A stretch of 64,000 nucleotides of DNA from Oculina patagonica (Eukaryota), in assembly GCF_052425735.1 (NCBI RefSeq), contig NC_135769.1, positions 32,302,001 to 32,366,000 of the forward strand, in the 5' to 3' direction. Both the position numbers and the translations under genes were made by a program. The stretch's first letter is position 1. The number at the start of each line of letters is the position of its first letter. This document shows, piece by piece, positions 21,229 to 50,000 of this stretch. The notes under the pieces are model-generated. The model did no database searches and had not been told where the DNA came from. It saw nothing but the letters and a program-made list of their open reading frames with translations.

Positions 21229-21594
21229 ACTCTAAGCAAACTTGTAGAAGACAAGCTTTTTTATAAAATAGAAAATCACAACCTTACAATACAAATTGCC
21301 TATGGTCACAAAACTTTTTAAGGAACGTTTACACAGGAAATTTTTGTTGCGGAACTCAATGCAATTTTAACGCCACAAGATCGCAGAAGACTTCCTGCAA
21401 CTTCGGTGCGACAAAAATTGCATTGTGTTGCGAGACAAAAAACCCCCGTGTAAACTGGGCTTTAGTTCTCCCAAACTTCCTTAATTCTCTGCTTGCATCA
21501 GATGCATAATCATGACAGATATAATAATAAATATTAATTTCTAAATAGCATGAAGAGCAGGAAGGAGAAAACCTTTAAAAAACTGTTTCCTATG

Positions 21595-23516
21595 TTAACC
21601 CAACAGTTCAGTCTCAGCTTTCTTGTCCTTAACGCTCACACCCTTACTTCCTAAAATATAAAATCTCAGTGGCTTAAGAGCTGACTCAGATCCATAGGAG
21701 TGTATTCCTATTCTTGTTGATGTCACTATAGTAATGTCTTTCTTTTGAGGATTCTTGTCATCTTCAAGCCAGAACCTATCTGAAGTTGCCATGTCTTCCT
21801 TATTAAGATTAGCTTTTTCAATGCAAAGAGCTTGACAAAGCTTTGAAGGCCCATTGGTCAACTGAAAGTCTTTCAACTTGCTTCCACTGTCTCTTCGCTT
21901 GATCCCTCTGAAAGATTTCATAGAATCTAATCCTGGAATATAAAAAGATCTGGCTTTGGCTCAACAGTGCTGGTGTTTTACTCTGTTTTCCATAGCATGC
22001 AGCAGCTAAAGTATTGCTACCCCCCTCCCCCCATCCTCTAGTCTACTGCAGGTTATTTTTTTCAACAGCTATGTTACTAACTCGGAATTTTGCCAGGTTT
22101 TTTTTGAAAGTAAATTGCCTTGCTAAAAAATAAGACGCAATAACCCAAGCCAGTGTTCACACCTAGACTGTCTGATCCGGAGACCAACCCAGGCCTTAAA
22201 GGTCACCATGCAATGTTTGGCCTACTCACAAATGCTTATGCTAAGAAACATGAATATACTCTTCAAGAACAAATGTACACCCATTTCCCCATGAGCCATT
22301 CCATTTTATATCCACCCCCCCCCCCTCCATTGATGAGGTAAGTCAAAATGGCTTTCCTTACTTTTAAGGGACTCGCGCTATATAGGAAAACAACTGTCTA
22401 AATGCACGCGCAAAATGGCGCAATTAACTGTAAAAGCGATGTACACGCAAAATGATAAATTTATTGAAAAAAAAAAAAACGCATCACGTTTGTTCTTCAG
22501 CTCGCTTGCGGTTAGTTCCACTCCAGTTTGCTTGCGGTAAGTTCCACTCCAGTTTGCTTGGGGTTAGTTCCACTCAGGTTTGCTTGCGGTTAGCTTTTAT
22601 TTGTTAGTAAGCAGCACTTTTTTAAAAAATTGTTAACTGTAACACTAGTGTAGTACTACTTTTGTTTACGCCATTTTGCGCGTGCATTTAGACAGTTGTT
22701 TTCCTTGTCCCTTAAAAGTAAGGAAAGCTGTCAAAAGTTACCCCCGAAGAAAAAAAGATCAAAGTGCCGACATGATACCCCCCTTCAGAAATAATCCAAT
22801 TTTTGAATTTCCTTCAGAAAAAAAGCCATCTTTTCCCTAACCCCCTCATAAATATTCAAAAGATCGAAAGTGCCGACAGGGCTACTCCCTCAGAAATGAC
22901 TTCAAAAAAACCCTTCAGAAAATCTCATCTTTAGGGGTGGGGGTGTGAAGATAAAATGGAATGGCCCCATGCCAGTGAGTTAAGAACAGTTACTGAACCC
23001 ACCCTGGAGAGGCTCCAAACCTCTAATCAACACACAAGCGCCAGGTTCCTGACCGCTGATGTTCAGACAGTGATACATTCCGTAAATAATGTACACATAA
23101 GCTGTTCCCGGCGCCATGTACATGGGCTCAGTGCGAGAAGTCCGTTTACCTCCAAACGCATGGCAAGCTTTGTCATTCTCACCCAGATAACCTTCAGTCT
23201 CAACTATCCGTCCACACAGCACCTCTTCATTGTCAAGAACACGATAAAGCAACTTTCCCAAGAGTTGTTTGGCCAAGTCTTCTGTGGGTGTATCGTAAAA
23301 AGACCTGCCTAGTTTGTTCAAAGACGAGCTTTTGTTCTCAAGCTTCAGTTTAGCTTTTTTGTTAGGTGAAACACATGAAATATCATCAGAGTCTGTTTTG
23401 AAATAGATGCTTTTTTCGCCTTCTTCTTTGATTTCAACTGACAAGTCTTCTTTTTCAGTTTTGTCGTTTATACGAGGCCCGTTTCGATTTCTCTTCGCCG
23501 CCTTACGAGCCGCCAT
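21595..23516 (-). CDS. MPG: DNA-3-methyladenine glycosylase (AAG/MPG), 2 exons: 23516-23003 and 21932-21595
   Basis: [54 protein letters not shown]|[23 protein letters not shown]: hallmark motifs of the AAG family. The phase-1 GT-AG intron joins the two track ORFs. Confidence 0.95.
22350..22729. mobile_element. MITE with long TIRs and an internal ~29-bp tandem repeat, in the MPG intron
   Basis: GCTTTCCTTACTTTTAAGGGAC...AAAACAACTGTCTAAATGCACGCGCAAAATGGCG is inverted at the other end. Flanks GTCAAAAT and GTCAAAAG. GCTTGCGGTTAGTTCCACTCCAGTTT repeated 3-4 times. Confidence 0.7.
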
Positions 23517-24053
23517 ATTGTTTCTGTCGATTTGATTTGTTGTGTAACTCACCACGAAATGCCCCTAGTCGCGCCCGTAAATATCGGGGGGCGCACTGTC
23601 ACTTTAGCCAAGTACTGCAACACATCAATGATTTGTTTGTCGTTTGTTTGTTTGTTAATTTATTATTTTTTTTGTCTGCATTGCATCTTAAATATTGCAA
23701 AGGAGAAGAGTAAATAAGATATTTTTTGTTCGTATTTTTTATTTCTTATCTACAATTTTTATCTCTACAAAATAGAATTACATCATATCTTTTACAAGTA
23801 AGAAAATAATATTTTTAAACAGACCTATACAAGACATCCAAGTGTTATTCTAATCAGGGCTTAGGTCACACGCAGTTCACAGCTCCCTAAACAAGCCATG
23901 AAATTATTTTAGTACCAGTAATAATGAAACGCCATAAAACGTGCACCAAATTAAACAGATAGTCTGATAGGGCATTACATGTATTAAAAAAAACTCAAAA
24001 GGAAATATTTATGACTACAAAATGACACTATTCAATACATGATAATAAAATTA

Positions 24054-26245
24054 TTATATATTTGGCAGTATTTTATGGGTTTTTTCTTTGGTTGCAGCAC
24101 GTTCCTGTAGTTTGGCCAATAGCATTTCACAGTCATCAGCAACTATAAGAATATCTTTGTTTTCACCATACACAAACCCTGCCTTAACAGCATTTTGAAT
24201 CTGAAAAGAAAAGAAAAACCAATAAATAATATCACTGCAGTATTGATAATGCTAAAAAATACATGTAATATTTCCTTGAAAGAGAAATCTTATCCACGTA
24301 CCCATTCCAACAGGCTACCCCAATAATTTGCAACATTCAAAACTCCTATTGGCTTATCATGGAGTCCAAGCTGGTACCTAACAAATAAACAAACAAACTT
24401 AATCAGACAGTTAAAAAGAAATTGAATTTCCAAAATTGAATGGAAAGTAAAGTTACCAACTCTTTGTTGACACATGAAACAATGATTTTAATGACTGCAT
24501 TCTCACCATGTGATCATTTCCAGAAGTTCTTCAATGGTGCCATAACCTCCTGGCAAAGCTATCAGAGCATCGGCCTTAAGAAATAAATAAATGATCTAAG
24601 CTTCAGAGTAATAAGCACAAACAAGAATACGACAACTCAGCTCAGCACAATAGAGGGAAGTATGATTTTAAAGCCAAGGCCTTAAAAACTAAAAACTAAT
24701 GTGCATTCAAGCCTTCAGTCAGATAACTTCACTCTACAAATAATAACTAACAATCATAATGATATTTATTATTTAATTAACATAAGTAACACAATTATGC
24801 CTAAAATATTATTTAATTATGTTACATGAAAATTCTTAGCCCCATAAAATTAAGTAAGAAATTATATAGAATTTATTTTTATATCCATATTTGTTATCAA
24901 AAATCAATGGAAAGGGCATAATTATTGTATAAACAGGAATGCTCACAAAAATGATAGATTGGACATGTTTGAATCAGAAGCTGAATTATTTTCAACCCCC
25001 CACATTTATGTCATCTTTTACACTGCATATAAACTATAAACCAAAATAAAAAGCTTAGATCTGTCTCCTATAACTACCTGTTCTAGCATGCTCCTTTTCC
25101 TGGTATGCATATCTTCAACCAGTACTGTTTTACCAACACTGTCCAAGTCTTTAGGATCTAAAAATAAAAACCAAAGCTGGTTTTTATTTGGAATTGTTGT
25201 TTTTTCAGGAGGGAGGAAAACCGGAATACCAGAGAAAAACCCTTGGAGCAAAGTGTGAACCAACAAACTCAACCTGCATATGGCCCCAGGTATGAAAATT
25301 GAACCCCAGCCATACTGGTGGAACGCGAGCACCCTCCCCACTACTATCCCTCCTCCCCCTAAAAAAACTATTTAAGTAAATATAGCTCATTTCTCATCCT
25401 TCACCAAGGTTAATGACTAGGTTAATGACCACCAGGTACCAGCTTGGACTCCACGATAAGGGCCAATAGGAGTGTTGAATGTTGCAAATTATTGGGGTAG
25501 CCTGTTGGAATGGGTACATGGATTAAGTGACAGGGGATGATTGAAGGATTTTTTGGTGTTGAACTTTTCAATATCCTTGAAATCCCAAGTACCCCCCCCC
25601 CCCCTGGATCTGACAGAACGTTATTGGTTGTAAATGAAAACATTCTGCAATGCTTACTTCTTGTAACAAAGAACTCAGGAAGAAATCCAGTGACTTGACA
25701 GCCACCGTCAGCAACAGTCTTAGCTACAGTACCCATGAGTCCTACATTTCCTCCTCCATATATGAGGTTAATCTTGTTTTTCACCAAGCATTGGCCAAGA
25801 GCTGTAAATAATTTAAAAAACAACAAAATATGAACATGTTTGTTATTAAAAATATATGAAAACAGTTTGAGCATCAAAAACATTATTTTTATTTCATTTC
25901 CCCTGACTCCCCTCTCCTCCACGATCCAAATGAAAAACAATAGATGAAAATCAATGACAACGGATGAAAATTGGTGATTATCAATACAAAATCAATGGAA
26001 ATCGATGAAAGTCGATCATGTTCAAAGTCATCGATTGGTCAGACCCCCGGATCAGACCGGCCAGAATATTTGGCAAATTATAAAAAACTTGTAAGACTTT
26101 AACAATTAATCCCTATAAAAAATCTAATAACAGATAAAAATTACACAAAAGTTATTCAAACAATGGTACCTTTAGCGCCTTCCTCGAACCTCGGATCATT
26201 ACCTAAGCTGGAGCCACAAAACACAGTAATGGTCTTCAGCGCCAT
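24054..26245 (-). CDS. LOG: LONELY GUY (LOG) family nucleoside 5'-monophosphate phosphoribohydrolase, 196 aa, 6 exons: 26245-26170, 25801-25658, 25157-25078, 24574-24507, 24377-24302, 24200-24054
   Basis: Spliced protein: [67 protein letters not shown]...[72 protein letters not shown].... The exons total 591 nt, all GT-AG and in phase. VFCGS, YGGG.GLMG, MH.RK and PGGxGTxEE are LOG signatures. Confidence 0.93.
25203..25352 (-). mobile_element. tRNA-derived SINE fragment in LOG intron 2
   Basis: GGAGGGAGGAAAACCGGA...GAGAAAAACCCT...AACAAACTCAACC pattern typical of anthozoan SINE2 repeats, with a degenerate tRNA head. Confidence 0.6.
25434..25523 (+). pseudogene. Inverted duplicate of LOG exon 5 with its splice junctions, inside LOG intron 2
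   Basis: Reverse complement of about 24292-24379, with 3 substitutions and a 2-nt (GG) insertion. Confidence 0.92.
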
Positions 26246-27971
26246 TATGAACGTGGGGTAATATTTTGCCAGGCGTTCCTATGATCTCCTTCCCAGGTTC
26301 CACTCGATCATATCTGCCGTTTTGAACATCTGCCGGCCCCCGGGTACCTGCCCTCCATGCTCCATCTATTCTCGATCCATCGCGCAGAGAAATGACCGTG
26401 ACGCCTAAAGTTTGCAGTTTTTCGAGAACCGTTTACTGTTCATAGCTTAGTAGAGAATGGCAAAGATTGCCCTGGAGAAAAGGCTCAATCGCAAGACGTG
26501 AGGGACACGTTAGAGATTTCAATTTCTTTTCTCCTTTATTTTTTTTTTGGGGGGGGGAGGGGTGCGGGGCTGATTGAGAATTTGATGTGCGTTGAAGACA
26601 GACTACATGTTCTTGCCCATTTTGCCTTGTTTTTCGACTTTTCTCATCGCGATTATCTGTCCCATAAGACTGACAGTAACCCGCCATCAAGAAACTTTCT
26701 AGCCGCTGAATAAAGATTGCTTTAATCAGTCGTGTCAGCACTTTTTGAAGCTCATGTCAAGTCCAGAAAAATAGCCATGAAGTCTGCACCATTTTGACAA
26801 TTTTTTACGGTTAAACGAGTGTCCGAAAAAAAAAAGAAACGGAGATGTGATGTTACACGCGTTTGTCAGAAAAGCAAAAGTAACCCGTTACATACGTTTA
26901 TTCATAAGAATTATTTCTTAACTTCAAACTTCATTCGCAATTCACATATTATTTTATTCACATGCAGAGCTTAGCTTGCCATTAGAAAATTTAATAACTC
27001 ACTTATTTGCAACAAAAATAAAATTCCGCCCCATTAGAGTGCGTACTTTCCTCGCCACAATGAAAGACTATATATTTTCTAAAGCGGAGAAAATGTAATA
27101 AATTACACCGTTAATCGGCTAAAAGTAAATTGAAAGAGTAGCAAAACGAAATGAAAAGTGTACAACTAGCTGAATAACAACTCAAAGAAGAGAGAAACAC
27201 TTTAACAAAAATGAATAAGACGGTTTGCCTGAAGAGCACAATGTTGACCAACCCGACAACAACAACAACAACAACAACCTTTGTCAACCGAAAATGATCA
27301 CCCCGCCCTTTTACATCTCTTTTTATACCATACTTGATAATTTGCTTTGTCCAGTCAGAAAATTTTATAAAGAATGTTTGCACATCGAATGAAACTTGGG
27401 TATTCGATAAATGTCGCGAGAAAAGCGTACCCTTCAATCCTCTAATGGGGGAATGCTGTTTTTATTACGGAAAACTTCTGTGTGCTGCTGACTTGCAAAT
27501 ATCTTTAAAAGGTTTGAAATGTAACAAGAAGGCCCAGACTTAATGTCGAATTTTTCGTGACCAGAAGCCAATTGTTTAACTTAAGAAAAAAATCGGAATC
27601 TTCTATGTTAAGAAGCGTCTTTGTTACCAAATGTAGCCAATGGTTTATGCTCAAAGCTAGTGTCGACAAGTTTCTTTGTTTTGTAAAACGTTGAAGATCG
27701 TTGAACAATGAAGATAGTTTTATAAATGTAAATCAGGAACGAAACCACAATTCAATGGATCTTGTGAACATTCTGATTTGCGGCTTATGAAAAAATAGAT
27801 GAAAATTACATAAATCGATCATTAATTATTGAATGTAAAACGCTGACATGATGGTCTGGAAAGTCTTGTCTCTCCGCATGAGCTGCAATACTAACCGGTA
27901 GAACTGAAATTAAGAACAGTTAAAATCCACCGAGTCTTGTAAATTACTTCCTTCGAGTCTTGCGGACAGCA

Positions 27972-47041: not shown

Positions 47042-50000
47042 ATAAGCATTCAGACTTAAGAGAGCAGTGAAAATCAAGCCTACGACGTAGAAAGTCTGTT
47101 ATTTTAACCTTATGTTAATTAATATTACTGTGTTTAATTGTAGCCTTGTGGGGCATTACTAACACTTAAAGAAACTCAACAGTACATCTCCAAAGGAACA
47201 ACAGGACTTAGTACTTGGATGGTATGGTTTTCCTTAAATTAGTGCGCTAAAGGGCCACATACATGTTAACATGTATCAAGTGATTATAACAGCATGCAAC
47301 ATCTGCCATATTTAGCGCAGAATGCACTATTGTGATGGTTTGGTGGGTTGGCGTCTGCTAAACCCCTAAACCACTAAAGCACTAAACCACTAAACCGCTA
47401 ACGCGATGTAAACTTTTAATCACCAAATCACCAAAAATCACCAAATCACCAAAGGGGGAGGGGATGGAGAGCACCTGACCGTGTGCCCTTGGTAAAACAG
47501 GGAGTATATTGACGATACTTACAATTGAAGAACTCAAGGTATATATTTGTTTCAGAAAGCACTATGCTCTCCTTGTGGTACAATTCTTTGTGGAACAAAA
47601 TACTTTGTGCTACATGCATGCGCAGATCAGTCTACGTCACGAACATTGCGTGTTTCTACTGCAGAAGGATTCGTGTAGACTCCGTGGCGCCAAGTTAAAA
47701 CCACAAATTAATTGAATTAAACACTAAGGCGTCATAGCAGTTTATGTGAAATAATTCTTGATATGGCAACGCTGTTTTCTTAGAAAAGGTGATCTAGCAT
47801 CTCATAATTAATTGATAATATCTGTGTATAATTTTTAGCGACAATTTCGGGGGAAAAAGTCGCAATTTCAACATTTTATGCTTTGTAATTCATAGTTTGT
47901 GCTCTGCTCATGCACTGTTCTGAAAATTTGTAATTTTGTAGGTCTTTTTCTAAATGCTGAAGGGGACAATGCGGTATGATTCTTGTAGAATCTGTGGTGT
48001 TAATTTAATTAGACTTAAACACATCATAGCAGTCTAAGAGAAAAACAAAGGTATCATGTTACAAACCTTTGCACGAAAAGCACAAAAATCATGTTTGCTG
48101 CTTCAATACTCAACTGAAAGGTGAACTCATTTGACTTTTTCTCAAGCGAAATTACCCTGGAAAATTATTATCATGCTGTCGATTGATTGGCCATATTGCT
48201 TTCTGCACTGTCCTTTGAGTCTCTGAGTCTAAGGTGGATTAACTCCTGGGTTGCTGCTGTGCATGGTCTCTCTAACTAGTAACAGAAACCTCAGATTCTG
48301 CAAGCTGGACAGCAACTGGTGGTTATGGGCTATTTACTGTGTTTGTTATAAGAGTCGACTTTGTTGTCTGTTGCTCTGTATAATTAACATGCAGTTTTTT
48401 ATTGTTTTCTAACACAGGCAGGAGAATATCTTGCTGAGTGGGCACTGGAAAACACATCAACTTTCAAAGACAGGTGACTCAGTCAGTGTTTGTACATGCT
48501 TATTGACTGAACCAGAAGCCCTGAGTTTCTTTTTATGTATTTTCTAAGAATAAGCCTATCTGAGAGATATAGCCTTACATTACAATAATGCCAAAAAACG
48601 TGCATGCCGATCTTATACAAATCTGACAACCTTGGACCAACTCAAGCGACTTAGAGAGGTGTTCACCTTAAAGAGAGTTCAGTTGCAGACAAACATGTAA
48701 AATTCAACCAGGATATGTGAGCCAACCTTTAAGCATACACCTAAAGGATATGTCTGTCTTACAGTGGTGTCTGCTAAATAAGAGAGGTGACTTTAATTCT
48801 GCAAAGAGGTCATGAGCTGAAATCAAAATATTATTTTATGGACTAACTGATTTATTTCTAATATCGTCCTTTGTATTGTGGATTTGTCTACCATGCAGGA
48901 ACATCATAGAGTTGGGCTGTGGCGTTGGTTTGACAGGACTTGTTATTTGTTCTACAAGCTCGCCGTGCCAGTACATATTCAGCGACTATCATGAGGAGGT
49001 TCTTGAAGCTCTTCATTGCAACCTTGGATTAAATGGATTTACTCCAAACTTTGAACCAAGCCAGATGGAAGAGACATCATTATCTTGTACTGTTAGAAAA
49101 AATAATATTGACTCCGAAAAAAGCATGGATAAACATTTGGAAGAAAAACCAGTGGCAATGAGCATTCATTTGACTAACGACAATCAAAATCATACAAACA
49201 GCAGTAAAATACCAGTAGCTTTACACCAAAGATCTGAATTGACTAACGACAAGACAAAAGTAAAGGAGTCAGATTTACAGAAATGTGATGGCATTCTAGG
49301 GTGTAAGGCTTGTGGTTCTGATTTCTTGGAAAGTGATGGTACGTGTAACCAGTCAAGCAGAGCTGTAAATTTTATTGCTTACTTTTCAAGACAATCTTCG
49401 AATATCTGGAGACATTTAGCTGACGACTGTGGGAAACATTCTGAGAGAGCCCAGGTAGATGTTTGTAAATTAGAGTGGCAAAATCTGAGGAAAAGTGATT
49501 TGGAGAAATTTCCTGTTGGGATCATCTTAGCTGCTGGTATGTAATATAATCTGAGATAATATATAACTATTTTTATAAGTACCATTTTTTTTCTCTTGTT
49601 CTTTCTCGCTCTTAAATTTAGTGTATGCTGTCTGGTGTTTCTTCTTTAACTGAAAAATTATGAAAAAATCTTTAAAGGAAAGAATAAACTGAGGCAAAGA
49701 GGGAGAGTATGGATATTTTCTTGTTGAAACTCTTAAACCTGGCCCAGGGGGGGTACTCCCATAAATTTCGGATAGGGGTGTGCCGCCAAGGTTCTTAAAC
49801 CCTGCCCCTATTTAAGGATAAAGAAAGCGAAAATTGATACCCTTTTTAAGGCCCAAAACCGAAAAATGACACCCTATTCAAGGGGAGGAGAAGCGTTCCG
49901 TGACGACCCAAATAACGGCTAACCGCGCACGGCAAGACACAAATCTTTATAAAATCGCTTTTCTAATACCTGAACAGAAAATTCAGTTTTAAGATATCTT

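What the first reader, a model, noticed from the sequence alone, without database searches (positions are those of the whole stretch)
24054..26245. Intact, intron-containing LONELY GUY (cytokinin-activating family) gene in an animal genome
Seen: six in-phase GT-AG exons give a 196-aa type-I-like LOG protein with the catalytic Arg (MHTRK) and [16 protein letters not shown]. It lies between animal genes and carries host SINE sequence in an intron, which argues against contamination. Known: LOG enzymes of plants, bacteria and fungi cleave N6-substituted AMP to the free base, giving active cytokinins such as iP; they are not part of the standard vertebrate gene set. Inference: with i6AMP from tRNA turnover (TRIT1), the animal could make free cytokinin. 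In a probable coral this could signal to algal symbionts or microbes. Plain nucleotide sanitation is an equally valid role. Origin by ancient retention or horizontal transfer is open.
Basis: partly seen in the sequence, partly recalled or inferred. Interest (0 to 1): 0.85.

Follow-up and report, generated by a model that had tools for sequence, protein, structure and literature searches.

The report
Expressed LOG nucleotide hydrolase gene of corals
The coral Oculina patagonica has a real, spliced and transcribed gene for a plant-like LOG ("cytokinin-activating") enzyme, and the same gene occurs in every cnidarian class sampled, so it is an old cnidarian gene already named in public annotation whose function has not been studied in any paper I could search.

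Summary
Six GT-AG exons on the minus strand (26245..24054) encode 196 aa, 100% identical to NCBI "hypothetical protein ACROYT_G039107 [Oculina patagonica]". RNA contigs from three public runs carry all five splice joints at the modelled borders.

The protein is a type-I LOG family member. It passes the TIGR00730 and PF03641 cut-offs. Its nearest solved relative is Arabidopsis LOG3 (47% identity, TM 0.92). The catalytic Arg93 and Glu116, the AMP site and the proposed prenyl pocket are all intact.

The gene is neither contamination nor a recent transfer.
- Orthologues occur in stony corals, sea anemones, an octocoral, a hydrozoan and a scyphozoan.
- The five intron positions are conserved.
- The gene tree follows the species tree.
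- The neighbourhood is shared with Nematostella, Orbicella and Pocillopora.

Many carriers have no algal symbionts, which weakens the symbiont-signal idea. No other animal phylum appeared among the best 120 hits. The origin (old eukaryotic gene or stem-cnidarian transfer) is unresolved.

Most likely the enzyme hydrolyses N6-modified AMP, and perhaps AMP, to free base plus ribose-5-phosphate. Whether this serves signalling or nucleotide housekeeping cannot be read from sequence.

RefSeq already names orthologues "LOG4" or "LOG7-like". The scan noted this same stretch once more (s1-278914), not on other DNA.

The parts
26170..26245 (-). LOG exon 1 (ATG at 26245; aa 1-25 plus the first base of codon 26). 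Holds the VFCGSS phosphate-binding start of the Rossmann fold.
   Evidence: RNA joint 25801|26170 in 3 runs
25658..25801 (-). LOG exon 2 (aa 26-74). Holds the [10 protein letters not shown] nucleotide-binding loop.
   Evidence: best PDB match Arabidopsis LOG8 and LOG3; joints
25078..25157 (-). LOG exon 3 (aa 74-100). Holds MHTRK: Met90, His91 and Lys94 of the proposed prenyl/adenine pocket, and catalytic Arg93.
   Evidence: joints
24507..24574 (-). LOG exon 4 (aa 101-123). Holds the [16 protein letters not shown] motif with catalytic Glu116, Glu119 and Trp123.
   Evidence: PF03641, E 4e-8 for this exon alone; joints
24302..24377 (-). LOG exon 5 (aa 123-148)
   Evidence: joints
24054..24200 (-). 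LOG exon 6 (aa 149-196 plus TAA stop)
   Evidence: joint 24200|24302
23736..24053 (-). 3' untranslated region, about 300 nt. RNA contigs run unbroken from the stop codon to 23736-23762. An AATAAA-type signal on the minus strand lies at about 23737-23742.
   Evidence: records 2, 10, 16; sequence
25434..25523 (+). Inverted, frame-broken copy of exon 5 with both of its splice borders, lying inside intron 2. It is 94-97% identical to 24292-24379. It is absent from the Orbicella and Pocillopora loci, so it is a young Oculina-lineage duplication. Normal splicing is still seen.
25160..25380 (.). Repeat-like stretch in intron 2. Many foreign RNA contigs lie on 25160-25239 and break off at 25225.
   Evidence: depth table and loose ends; no second copy in the window

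Best explanation
This is a genuine, vertically inherited cnidarian gene for a type-I LOG-family phosphoribohydrolase.

Shown: the gene is intact, spliced and transcribed. It sits in a conserved animal gene neighbourhood. It has orthologues with the same five introns in Anthozoa and Hydrozoa, and a protein orthologue in Scyphozoa. It keeps every residue that structural and mutational work on LOG enzymes ties to catalysis, AMP binding and the proposed N6-prenyl pocket.

Inferred mechanism: the protein has no visible targeting peptide, so it is probably cytosolic, and probably a dimer. It binds a purine nucleoside 5'-monophosphate through the GGGxxGLMG and PGGxGTxxE loops. With Arg93 and Glu116 it hydrolyses the N-glycosidic bond, releasing the free base and ribose-5-phosphate.

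Inferred substrates: N6-substituted AMPs such as isopentenyl-AMP from tRNA turnover, probably with some activity on AMP, as seen for the fungal, mycobacterial and Dictyostelium enzymes.

Inferred role (least certain): clearing and salvaging modified adenine nucleotides in all cnidarians. Free bases such as isopentenyladenine would be the unavoidable product. The role is not specific to algal symbiosis.
For: Gene model and identity to the annotated Oculina protein.
Splicing and expression. All five joints are present, and word depth is 165 for LOG versus 27 for the neighbouring MPG in run X1.
Family membership: TIGR00730 scores 171.9 bits (cut-off 96.35) and PF03641 scores 130.6 (cut-off 27). 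PDB sequence match to AtLOG3 has E 3e-52. The AlphaFold model (pLDDT 87.4) superposes on AtLOG3 with TM 0.92 and rmsd 1.3 A, and type-I LOGs rank above type-II.
Active site: S12, M90, H91, R93, K94, G110, G112, T113, E115, E116, E119 and W123 are invariant in 10 cnidarian LOGs. They correspond to CgLOG S19, M96, H97, R99, K100, G116, G118, T119, E121, E122, E125 and W129. Alanine mutants of the AMP-binding and catalytic residues among these almost abolish activity, except S19A (PMC4979012).
Distribution: six stony-coral genera, two sea anemones, an octocoral, the hydrozoan Clytia and the scyphozoan Sanderia.
Introns: identical positions and phases in Oculina and both Nematostella paralogues; 4 of 5 in the same columns in Clytia.
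Tree: Cnidaria lie on one side of a branch (92/91), and the internal order follows the species tree.
Synteny: LOG, RNPS1 and TEX2-like genes are shared with Nematostella. LOG followed by MPG in tandem is shared with Orbicella and Pocillopora.
Broader substrate range of non-plant LOGs: PMC11228631.
Against: No enzyme assay exists for any cnidarian LOG, so the substrate range and physiological role are inference.
The narrow NCBIfam equivalog model NF058542 is not reached (115.9 bits against a cut-off of 300).
Plant LOGs with the same pocket residues refuse AMP (PMC11228631), so the pocket does not predict AMP activity.
A Pocillopora paper lists a LOG-annotated gene among the top genes up-regulated in oral epidermis (PMC13581030). 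That hints at tissue-specific rather than purely housekeeping use. I could not verify that it is this orthologue.
Confidence: 0.6

Rival explanations
1. Hormone or signal reading. The enzyme's purpose is to make free cytokinin bases (iP, cZ) from nucleotides released by tRNA turnover or made by an isopentenyltransferase. The bases would act as signals within the animal, or to microbes or algal symbionts.
For: The full proposed prenyl pocket is identical to plant, Claviceps and C. glutamicum LOGs and invariant across Cnidaria. Non-plant LOGs tested so far prefer cytokinin nucleotides to AMP (PMC11228631). A LOG-annotated gene is up-regulated in the oral epidermis of Pocillopora. Cytokinins are reported to act as agonists at mammalian adenosine receptors (cited in PMC7316887), so a receptor class exists in animals.
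Against: Many carriers have no algal symbionts by my own knowledge of these species, so a symbiosis-specific role cannot explain retention. No cytokinin receptor, CKX or adenylate-IPT was examined or seen here. Nothing in the papers I could search reports cytokinin measurements in cnidarians.
Confidence: 0.2
2. Origin rival: the gene entered the stem lineage of Cnidaria by horizontal transfer from a bacterium or a non-animal eukaryote and then gained five introns. The alternative is descent from the opisthokont ancestor with loss in other animal phyla.
For: Searches with the protein and with a cnidarian profile put no other animal phylum in the best 120 hits. None of the five cnidarian introns is shared with a plant or a chytrid LOG. 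Chytrid fungi group with plants rather than with Cnidaria (93/77).
Against: Cnidaria do not nest inside either sampled bacterial clade or inside plants. The sampled bacteria sit together on the far side of a 92/87 branch, which is compatible with one eukaryotic LOG lineage. An AU test does not reject Cnidaria plus fungi as one clade (p 0.081). Only the best 120 hits were visible, so absence from sponges, placozoans, ctenophores or bilaterians is not shown.
Confidence: 0.4
3. Contamination, assembly artefact or a dead relic: the LOG stretch is bacterial or algal DNA misassembled into the coral scaffold, or an untranscribed pseudogene.
For: LOG is not part of the vertebrate gene set, and the closest non-cnidarian relatives are plants and bacteria.
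Against: The gene has five spliceosomal introns and spliced RNA in three runs. The same introns occur in Nematostella and Clytia. Neighbouring genes are conserved in three other cnidarian assemblies. The reading frame is intact and the active site is invariant.
Confidence: 0.01

Closest known systems
Arabidopsis thaliana LOG3 (At2g37210, PDB 2A33) and LOG8 (At5g11950, PDB 1YDH): plant cytokinin riboside 5'-monophosphate phosphoribohydrolases
   Same: The proteins have the same length class and are about 47% identical. Fold match has TM 0.92 and rmsd 1.3 A. The MHxRK and PGGYGTxEELLExITW motifs match, as do the catalytic Arg and Glu and the pocket residues.
   Different: The host is an animal. 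None of the plant intron positions is shared. Plant enzymes reject AMP, and the cnidarian specificity is unknown. There is no known downstream two-component cytokinin pathway in animals (my own knowledge, not tested here).
Type-I LOGs of non-plant organisms: Claviceps purpurea LOG (5AJT), Corynebacterium glutamicum Cg2612 (5ITS), Pseudomonas aeruginosa (5ZBJ), Dictyostelium DdLog
   Same: They share the family and the type-I architecture, with PDB sequence E values of 1e-40 to 4e-38. As a model for function, they act on cytokinin nucleotides and also on AMP (PMC11228631).
   Different: Identity is 39-42%. The Claviceps enzyme has insertions that the coral protein lacks.
Annotated cnidarian orthologues, e.g. 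'probable cytokinin riboside 5'-monophosphate phosphoribohydrolase LOG4' of Orbicella faveolata and Acropora millepora, and two tandem Nematostella vectensis genes
   Same: Protein identity is 46-90% (57-90% within Hexacorallia, 52% Paramuricea, 46% Clytia). Intron positions are the same in Nematostella and Clytia, and the chromosomal neighbourhood is shared with Nematostella, Orbicella and Pocillopora.
   Different: Oculina has a single copy in this window, whereas Nematostella has a tandem pair. Oculina alone carries the inverted exon-5 copy in intron 2.
Type-II LOG / PpnN (YgdH) nucleotide nucleosidases
   Same: They share the same superfamily fold and the PGGxGTxxE chemistry (ranks 23-50).
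   Different: Similarity is much weaker (E 5e-13 to 6e-9, 17-26% identity). These proteins are longer, with extra domains or an N-terminal extension. The coral protein is not of this type.

Membership tests
LOG family (Pfam PF03641 Lysine_decarbox / NCBIfam TIGR00730) | Profile score above the curated cut-off | tested here: met
   TIGR00730 scores 171.9 bits against 96.35. PF03641 scores 130.6 against 27. PF18306 scores 48.9 against 26.3. Exons 3, 4 and 5 alone hit PF03641 colinearly.
LOG family | PGGxGTxxE motif and GGGxxGxMG nucleotide-binding loop | tested here: met
   The protein carries PGGYGTIEE and [10 protein letters not shown]. P108, G109, G110, G112, T113, E115 and E116 are invariant in 10 cnidarian sequences.
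LOG family | Catalytic Arg and Glu (CgLOG Arg99 and Glu122) | tested here: met
   Arg93 lies in MHTRK and Glu116 in the motif. Both align to AtLOG3, AtLOG8, CpLOG and PaLOG. Residue roles come from PMC4979012.
Cytokinin-type LOG (plant, Claviceps, C. glutamicum) | Proposed prenyl-pocket residues Met, His, Lys, Glu, Trp (CgLOG M96, H97, K100, E125, W129) | tested here: met
   M90, H91, K94, E119 and W123 are present and invariant in Cnidaria. The pocket itself is a proposal from superposition, not from a substrate complex.
Type-I LOG | Length of about 180-220 aa without an N-terminal extension, and closer to type-I than to type-II structures | tested here: met
   The protein is 196 aa. Type-I PDB chains score E 3e-52 to 1.6e-22, type-II chains 5e-13 to 6e-9. 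Foldseek gives the same ranking.
Type-I LOG | Homodimer with the pocket completed by the partner chain | not tested
   Only a monomer was modelled.
LOG family | Rossmann-like alpha/beta fold of solved LOGs | tested here: met
   The AlphaFold2 model has pLDDT 87.4. Its best PDB match is 2A33 with TM 0.83/0.92 and rmsd 1.3 A. This is a predicted model, not a solved structure.
NCBIfam equivalog NF058542 (CtkRMPhLog) | Score above the equivalog cut-off of 300 bits | tested here: not met
   The score is 115.9 bits. The model's cut-off is far above what a protein of this divergence reaches. It does not bear on family membership, but automatic functional equivalence cannot be claimed.
Cytokinin riboside 5'-monophosphate phosphoribohydrolase (EC 3.2.2.n1) | Hydrolysis of iPRMP or tZRMP to free base plus ribose-5-phosphate | not testable with these tools
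   This needs a recombinant enzyme assay.

The most novel reading that the evidence does not exclude
Cnidarians make free cytokinin bases themselves, by LOG acting on isopentenyl-AMP from tRNA turnover. They use these bases as signals, for example in the oral epidermis, through purinergic or adenosine-type receptors, or towards their microbes. That would make this the first animal lineage with a genome-encoded direct cytokinin-activation step.
Probability: 0.12. Interest if true: 0.75.

Novelty: new member of a known kind. Interest (0 to 1): 0.42.

Why it matters
Cytokinins have been measured in mammalian tissues and cells, but vertebrates have no LOG (my own knowledge; not stated in the papers I read). 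The route to the free bases in animals is therefore unclear (PMC13274119, PMC7680852). In the searches run here, Cnidaria are the only animal phylum that showed a complete, conserved, expressed type-I LOG with the plant-type pocket. Nematostella has two tandem copies, no algal symbionts and, by my own knowledge, working genetics. It would therefore allow a clean test of whether an animal makes cytokinin bases enzymatically and what they do. If the enzyme proves to be a plain nucleotide-pool cleaner, the result still fills in a gene that coral expression studies already list without comment.

Tried and rejected
1. The spliced protein had no reference, so I could not search it directly. A representative search with exon 2 alone mostly returned exon-sized fragments.
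2. MAFFT misplaced exons 1, 3 and 6 when all six pieces were aligned to one homologue (A1), so that alignment was discarded. An alignment of one homologue plus exons 2, 4 and 5 (A2) drew in the full-length Oculina protein P0151. P0151 then served as the reference.
3. The ESM Atlas look-up gave only bacterial LOG clusters and no help on animal distribution.
4. Intron positions were compared with a plant and a chytrid to test ancient vertical descent. None is shared. One plant intron lies 2 nt from a cnidarian one, which I do not count.
5. I searched the window for further copies of the intron-2 'SINE' and found none.
6. An Acropora RNA contig shows an HMG-box ORF 25 nt upstream of LOG. No HMG-box gene lies near LOG in Oculina, Orbicella, Pocillopora or Nematostella, so I treat it as a chimeric assembly or an Acropora peculiarity.
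7. The supplement of the Pocillopora paper is not held. Samanovic et al. 2015 is not held either.
8. Literature searches for LOG or cytokinin in cnidarians or Metazoa found no dedicated study.
9. The lysine decarboxylase reading of the Pfam name is rejected, following the LOG literature (PMC4979012).
Full report
THE GENE IS THERE
On the minus strand, six exons join through GT-AG introns into a 591-nt reading frame of 196 codons plus TAA. The exons are 26245-26170, 25801-25658, 25157-25078, 24574-24507, 24377-24302 and 24200-24054. The ATG at 26245 is the first one after an in-frame TAG 12 codons upstream, as read.

The spliced protein is identical over all 196 residues to P0151. P0151 is the NCBI entry "hypothetical protein ACROYT_G039107 [Oculina patagonica]" from a 33.5-Mb scaffold. 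The window is therefore Oculina patagonica, a stony coral, and the public annotation already holds exactly this gene model.

IT IS TRANSCRIBED AND SPLICED
Three public runs from two studies and two organism labels hold 6-20% of the sampled words of the 2.3-kb stretch. The runs are guessed to be RNA and are kept as Logan contigs. The two best runs hold 17-20%, about what exons alone would give.

Laid on 21300-27200, the contigs show all five joints at the modelled borders. The skipped ends read CT..AC, which is GT..AG on the minus strand.
- In run X1 one 592-nt contig spans 26244 to 24052 with no mismatch. Its word depth is 165, against 27 for the neighbouring MPG gene.
- A further contig runs unbroken from the stop codon to 23736-23762, giving a 3' UTR of about 300 nt.
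- No RNA covers 23467-23663, so LOG and MPG are separate transcripts.
- Run X3 carries 7-8 differences per exon, so it comes from a relative or a divergent allele.

These are assembler contigs, so they show that the spliced form exists, not how abundant it is.

WHAT THE PROTEIN IS
P0151 passes TIGR00730 (171.9 bits, cut-off 96.35) and PF03641 (130.6 bits, cut-off 27). Exons 3, 4 and 5 taken alone hit PF03641 in colinear order.

The best solved relatives by sequence come:

| Relative | PDB | E-value |
|---|---|---|
| Arabidopsis LOG3 | 2A33 | 3e-52 |
| Arabidopsis LOG8 | 1YDH | 7e-47 |
| Claviceps LOG | 5AJT | 1e-40 |
| Pseudomonas type-I LOG | 5ZBJ | 6e-39 |
| C. glutamicum type-I LOG | 5ITS | 4e-38 |
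| Type-II LOGs | several | 5e-13 and weaker |

An AlphaFold2 model built on ten cnidarian sequences has mean pLDDT 87.4. It superposes on 2A33 with TM 0.92 and rmsd 1.3 A at 47% identity, and type-I structures again rank first.

Seo et al. (PMC4979012) assign these roles in C. glutamicum LOG:
- Arg99 and Glu122 act in catalysis.
- Ser19, Gly116-Thr119 and Glu121 bind AMP.
- Met96, His97, Lys100, Glu125 and Trp129 form a proposed N6-prenyl pocket.
- Alanine mutants of the AMP-binding and catalytic residues almost abolish activity, except S19A.

The coral protein has the matching residues S12, M90, H91, R93, K94, G110, G112, T113, E115, E116, E119 and W123. All of them are invariant in an alignment of ten cnidarian LOGs. 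The narrow NCBIfam equivalog NF058542 is not reached (115.9 bits against 300). The protein starts directly with the first Rossmann strand, so no targeting peptide is visible.

IT IS A HOST GENE OF OLD STANDING
Searches with an alignment of a homologue plus window exons (A2), with P0151 and with a cnidarian profile found orthologues across the phylum:
- Stony corals: Orbicella, Desmophyllum, Pocillopora, Acropora and Montipora.
- Sea anemones: Nematostella (two tandem genes) and Actinia.
- Octocoral: Paramuricea.
- Hydrozoan: Clytia.
- Scyphozoan: Sanderia.

RefSeq names several of them [quoted passage not shown], "LOG7-like" or "LOGL1".

I mapped the exon structures from genomic loci. Oculina and both Nematostella genes have introns at the same five codon positions and phases: 26/1, 74/1, 101/0, 123/2 and 149/0. 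Clytia shares four alignment columns exactly. Its fifth intron lies two columns away with the same phase, in a poorly aligned stretch.

A maximum-likelihood tree of 52 sequences puts all cnidarian LOGs on one side of a branch with support 92/91. One unidentified metagenome sequence from a JGI sample, P0012, joins them. The internal order follows the accepted species tree:
- The four robust corals group together.
- Acropora and Montipora are their sister group.
- Nematostella branches next, then the octocoral.
- The medusozoans lie outside.

Neighbouring genes are also shared.
- An RNPS1-type RRM exon is 75% identical at the protein level between Oculina and Nematostella.
- TEX2/PDZD8-like exons are 62-82% identical.
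- Both lie beside LOG in the two species.
- In Orbicella and Pocillopora, as in Oculina, an MPG DNA glycosylase gene follows LOG on the same strand.

Contamination, misassembly and recent transfer are thereby excluded.

WHERE IT CAME FROM IS NOT SETTLED
After Cnidaria, the next best hits are land plants at about 47-52% identity. Alphaproteobacteria such as Methylobacterium, Bacteroidota and chytrid fungi follow. No sponge, placozoan, ctenophore or bilaterian protein appeared in the best 120 of either search. That is suggestive, but it is not proof of absence.

In the unrooted tree the sampled bacteria sit behind one branch (92/87). Plants, a heterolobosean and chytrids sit behind another (93/77), and Cnidaria behind a third. 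This is compatible with a single eukaryotic LOG lineage.

Chytrids group with plants rather than with Cnidaria. However, an AU test does not reject Cnidaria plus fungi as one clade (p 0.081). None of the five cnidarian introns coincides with the six of a Beta vulgaris LOG or the two of a chytrid LOG. The introns therefore give no support to common descent and do not speak against it either. I rate retention from the opisthokont ancestor at about 0.6 and a stem-cnidarian transfer at about 0.4.

WHAT IT MOST LIKELY DOES
The chemistry can be stated with fair confidence. The enzyme hydrolyses the N-glycosidic bond of a purine nucleoside 5'-monophosphate, giving the free base and ribose-5-phosphate.

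The substrate range cannot be read from sequence. Plant LOGs with the same pocket refuse AMP. The Claviceps, M. tuberculosis and Dictyostelium enzymes take AMP but prefer isopentenyl-AMP (PMC11228631).

By my own knowledge of these species, Nematostella, Clytia, Desmophyllum, Paramuricea and Actinia have no algal symbionts, yet they keep the gene with an unchanged active site.

My preferred reading is a general role in clearing and salvaging N6-modified adenine nucleotides from RNA turnover. Free isopentenyladenine-type bases would be a by-product, and the animal may or may not use them.

Two hints remain untested.
- The tandem of LOG with MPG is conserved in three robust-clade corals. By my own knowledge of the enzyme, MPG is a glycosylase that removes damaged purines from DNA. 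The pairing may simply reflect the general conservation of gene order in corals.
- A laser-capture study of Pocillopora acuta lists a gene annotated as LOG3 among the five most significantly up-regulated genes behind an amino-acid-metabolism enrichment in the oral epidermis (PMC13581030). I could not confirm that it is the orthologue, because the supplement is not held.

NOVELTY
The gene is already in public annotation, and its orthologues carry LOG names. No paper in the searchable library treats a cnidarian or any animal LOG as a subject. The library lacks most subscription journals, so this is not proof that none exists.

I class it as a new member of a known kind. It is a well-supported, uncharacterised LOG lineage in the one animal phylum where these searches found it. 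It is of moderate interest, mainly because it makes the question of enzymatic cytokinin-base production in an animal directly testable in Nematostella.

Noticed in passing
window 25434-25523 versus 24292-24379: An inverted copy of LOG exon 5, including both splice borders, lies in intron 2. It is 94-97% identical and its frame is broken by a small insertion. It is absent from the Orbicella and Pocillopora LOG loci, so it is young. RNA contigs still show normal splicing of exons 2-3 and 4-5-6. The scan also flagged it as s1-278914.
   Followed up: partly
window 21595-23555 (minus strand); L006 22265-30318; L007 12353-13658: A 3-methyladenine DNA glycosylase gene (MPG, PF02245; splice joint 21931|23002 seen in RNA) lies directly downstream of LOG on the same strand. 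The same tandem occurs in Orbicella faveolata and in Pocillopora damicornis, where only about 250 bp separate the genes. It is not within 10 kb of LOG in Nematostella. The result is two purine N-glycosidases side by side. This may be plain synteny.
   Followed up: partly
window 22285-22678: RNA word depth is very high here (up to 557), with many loose ends and odd joints inside the MPG intron. It looks like a highly expressed dispersed repeat or an embedded small gene. I did not identify it.
   Followed up: no
L001 380-997 and 1022-1618 (Acropora RNA contig from Logan): A 205-aa HMG-box ORF ends 25 nt before the LOG start codon on one 1673-nt RNA contig. No HMG-box gene lies near LOG in Oculina, Orbicella, Pocillopora or Nematostella. 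It is probably a chimeric assembly.
   Followed up: partly
L002 10001-30531 and 31202-34863 (Nematostella): Nematostella has two tandem LOG paralogues with identical intron positions. The first intron of the upstream copy is 14 kb long.
   Followed up: yes
L008 (JGI sample 3300018935, 1444-nt contig): P0012 is an intron-free 195-aa LOG sequence from an unidentified organism in a JGI metagenome or metatranscriptome sample. It groups with the cnidarian LOGs on a long branch. It could be a medusozoan or another animal lineage. Its identity is unknown.
   Followed up: partly
window 48876-49544: An ORF with a Methyltransf_16/FAM86-like motif (ELGCGVGLTG) lies here. A FAM86 gene also lies near LOG in Pocillopora (L007 1270-5730), which extends the shared neighbourhood.
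   Followed up: no
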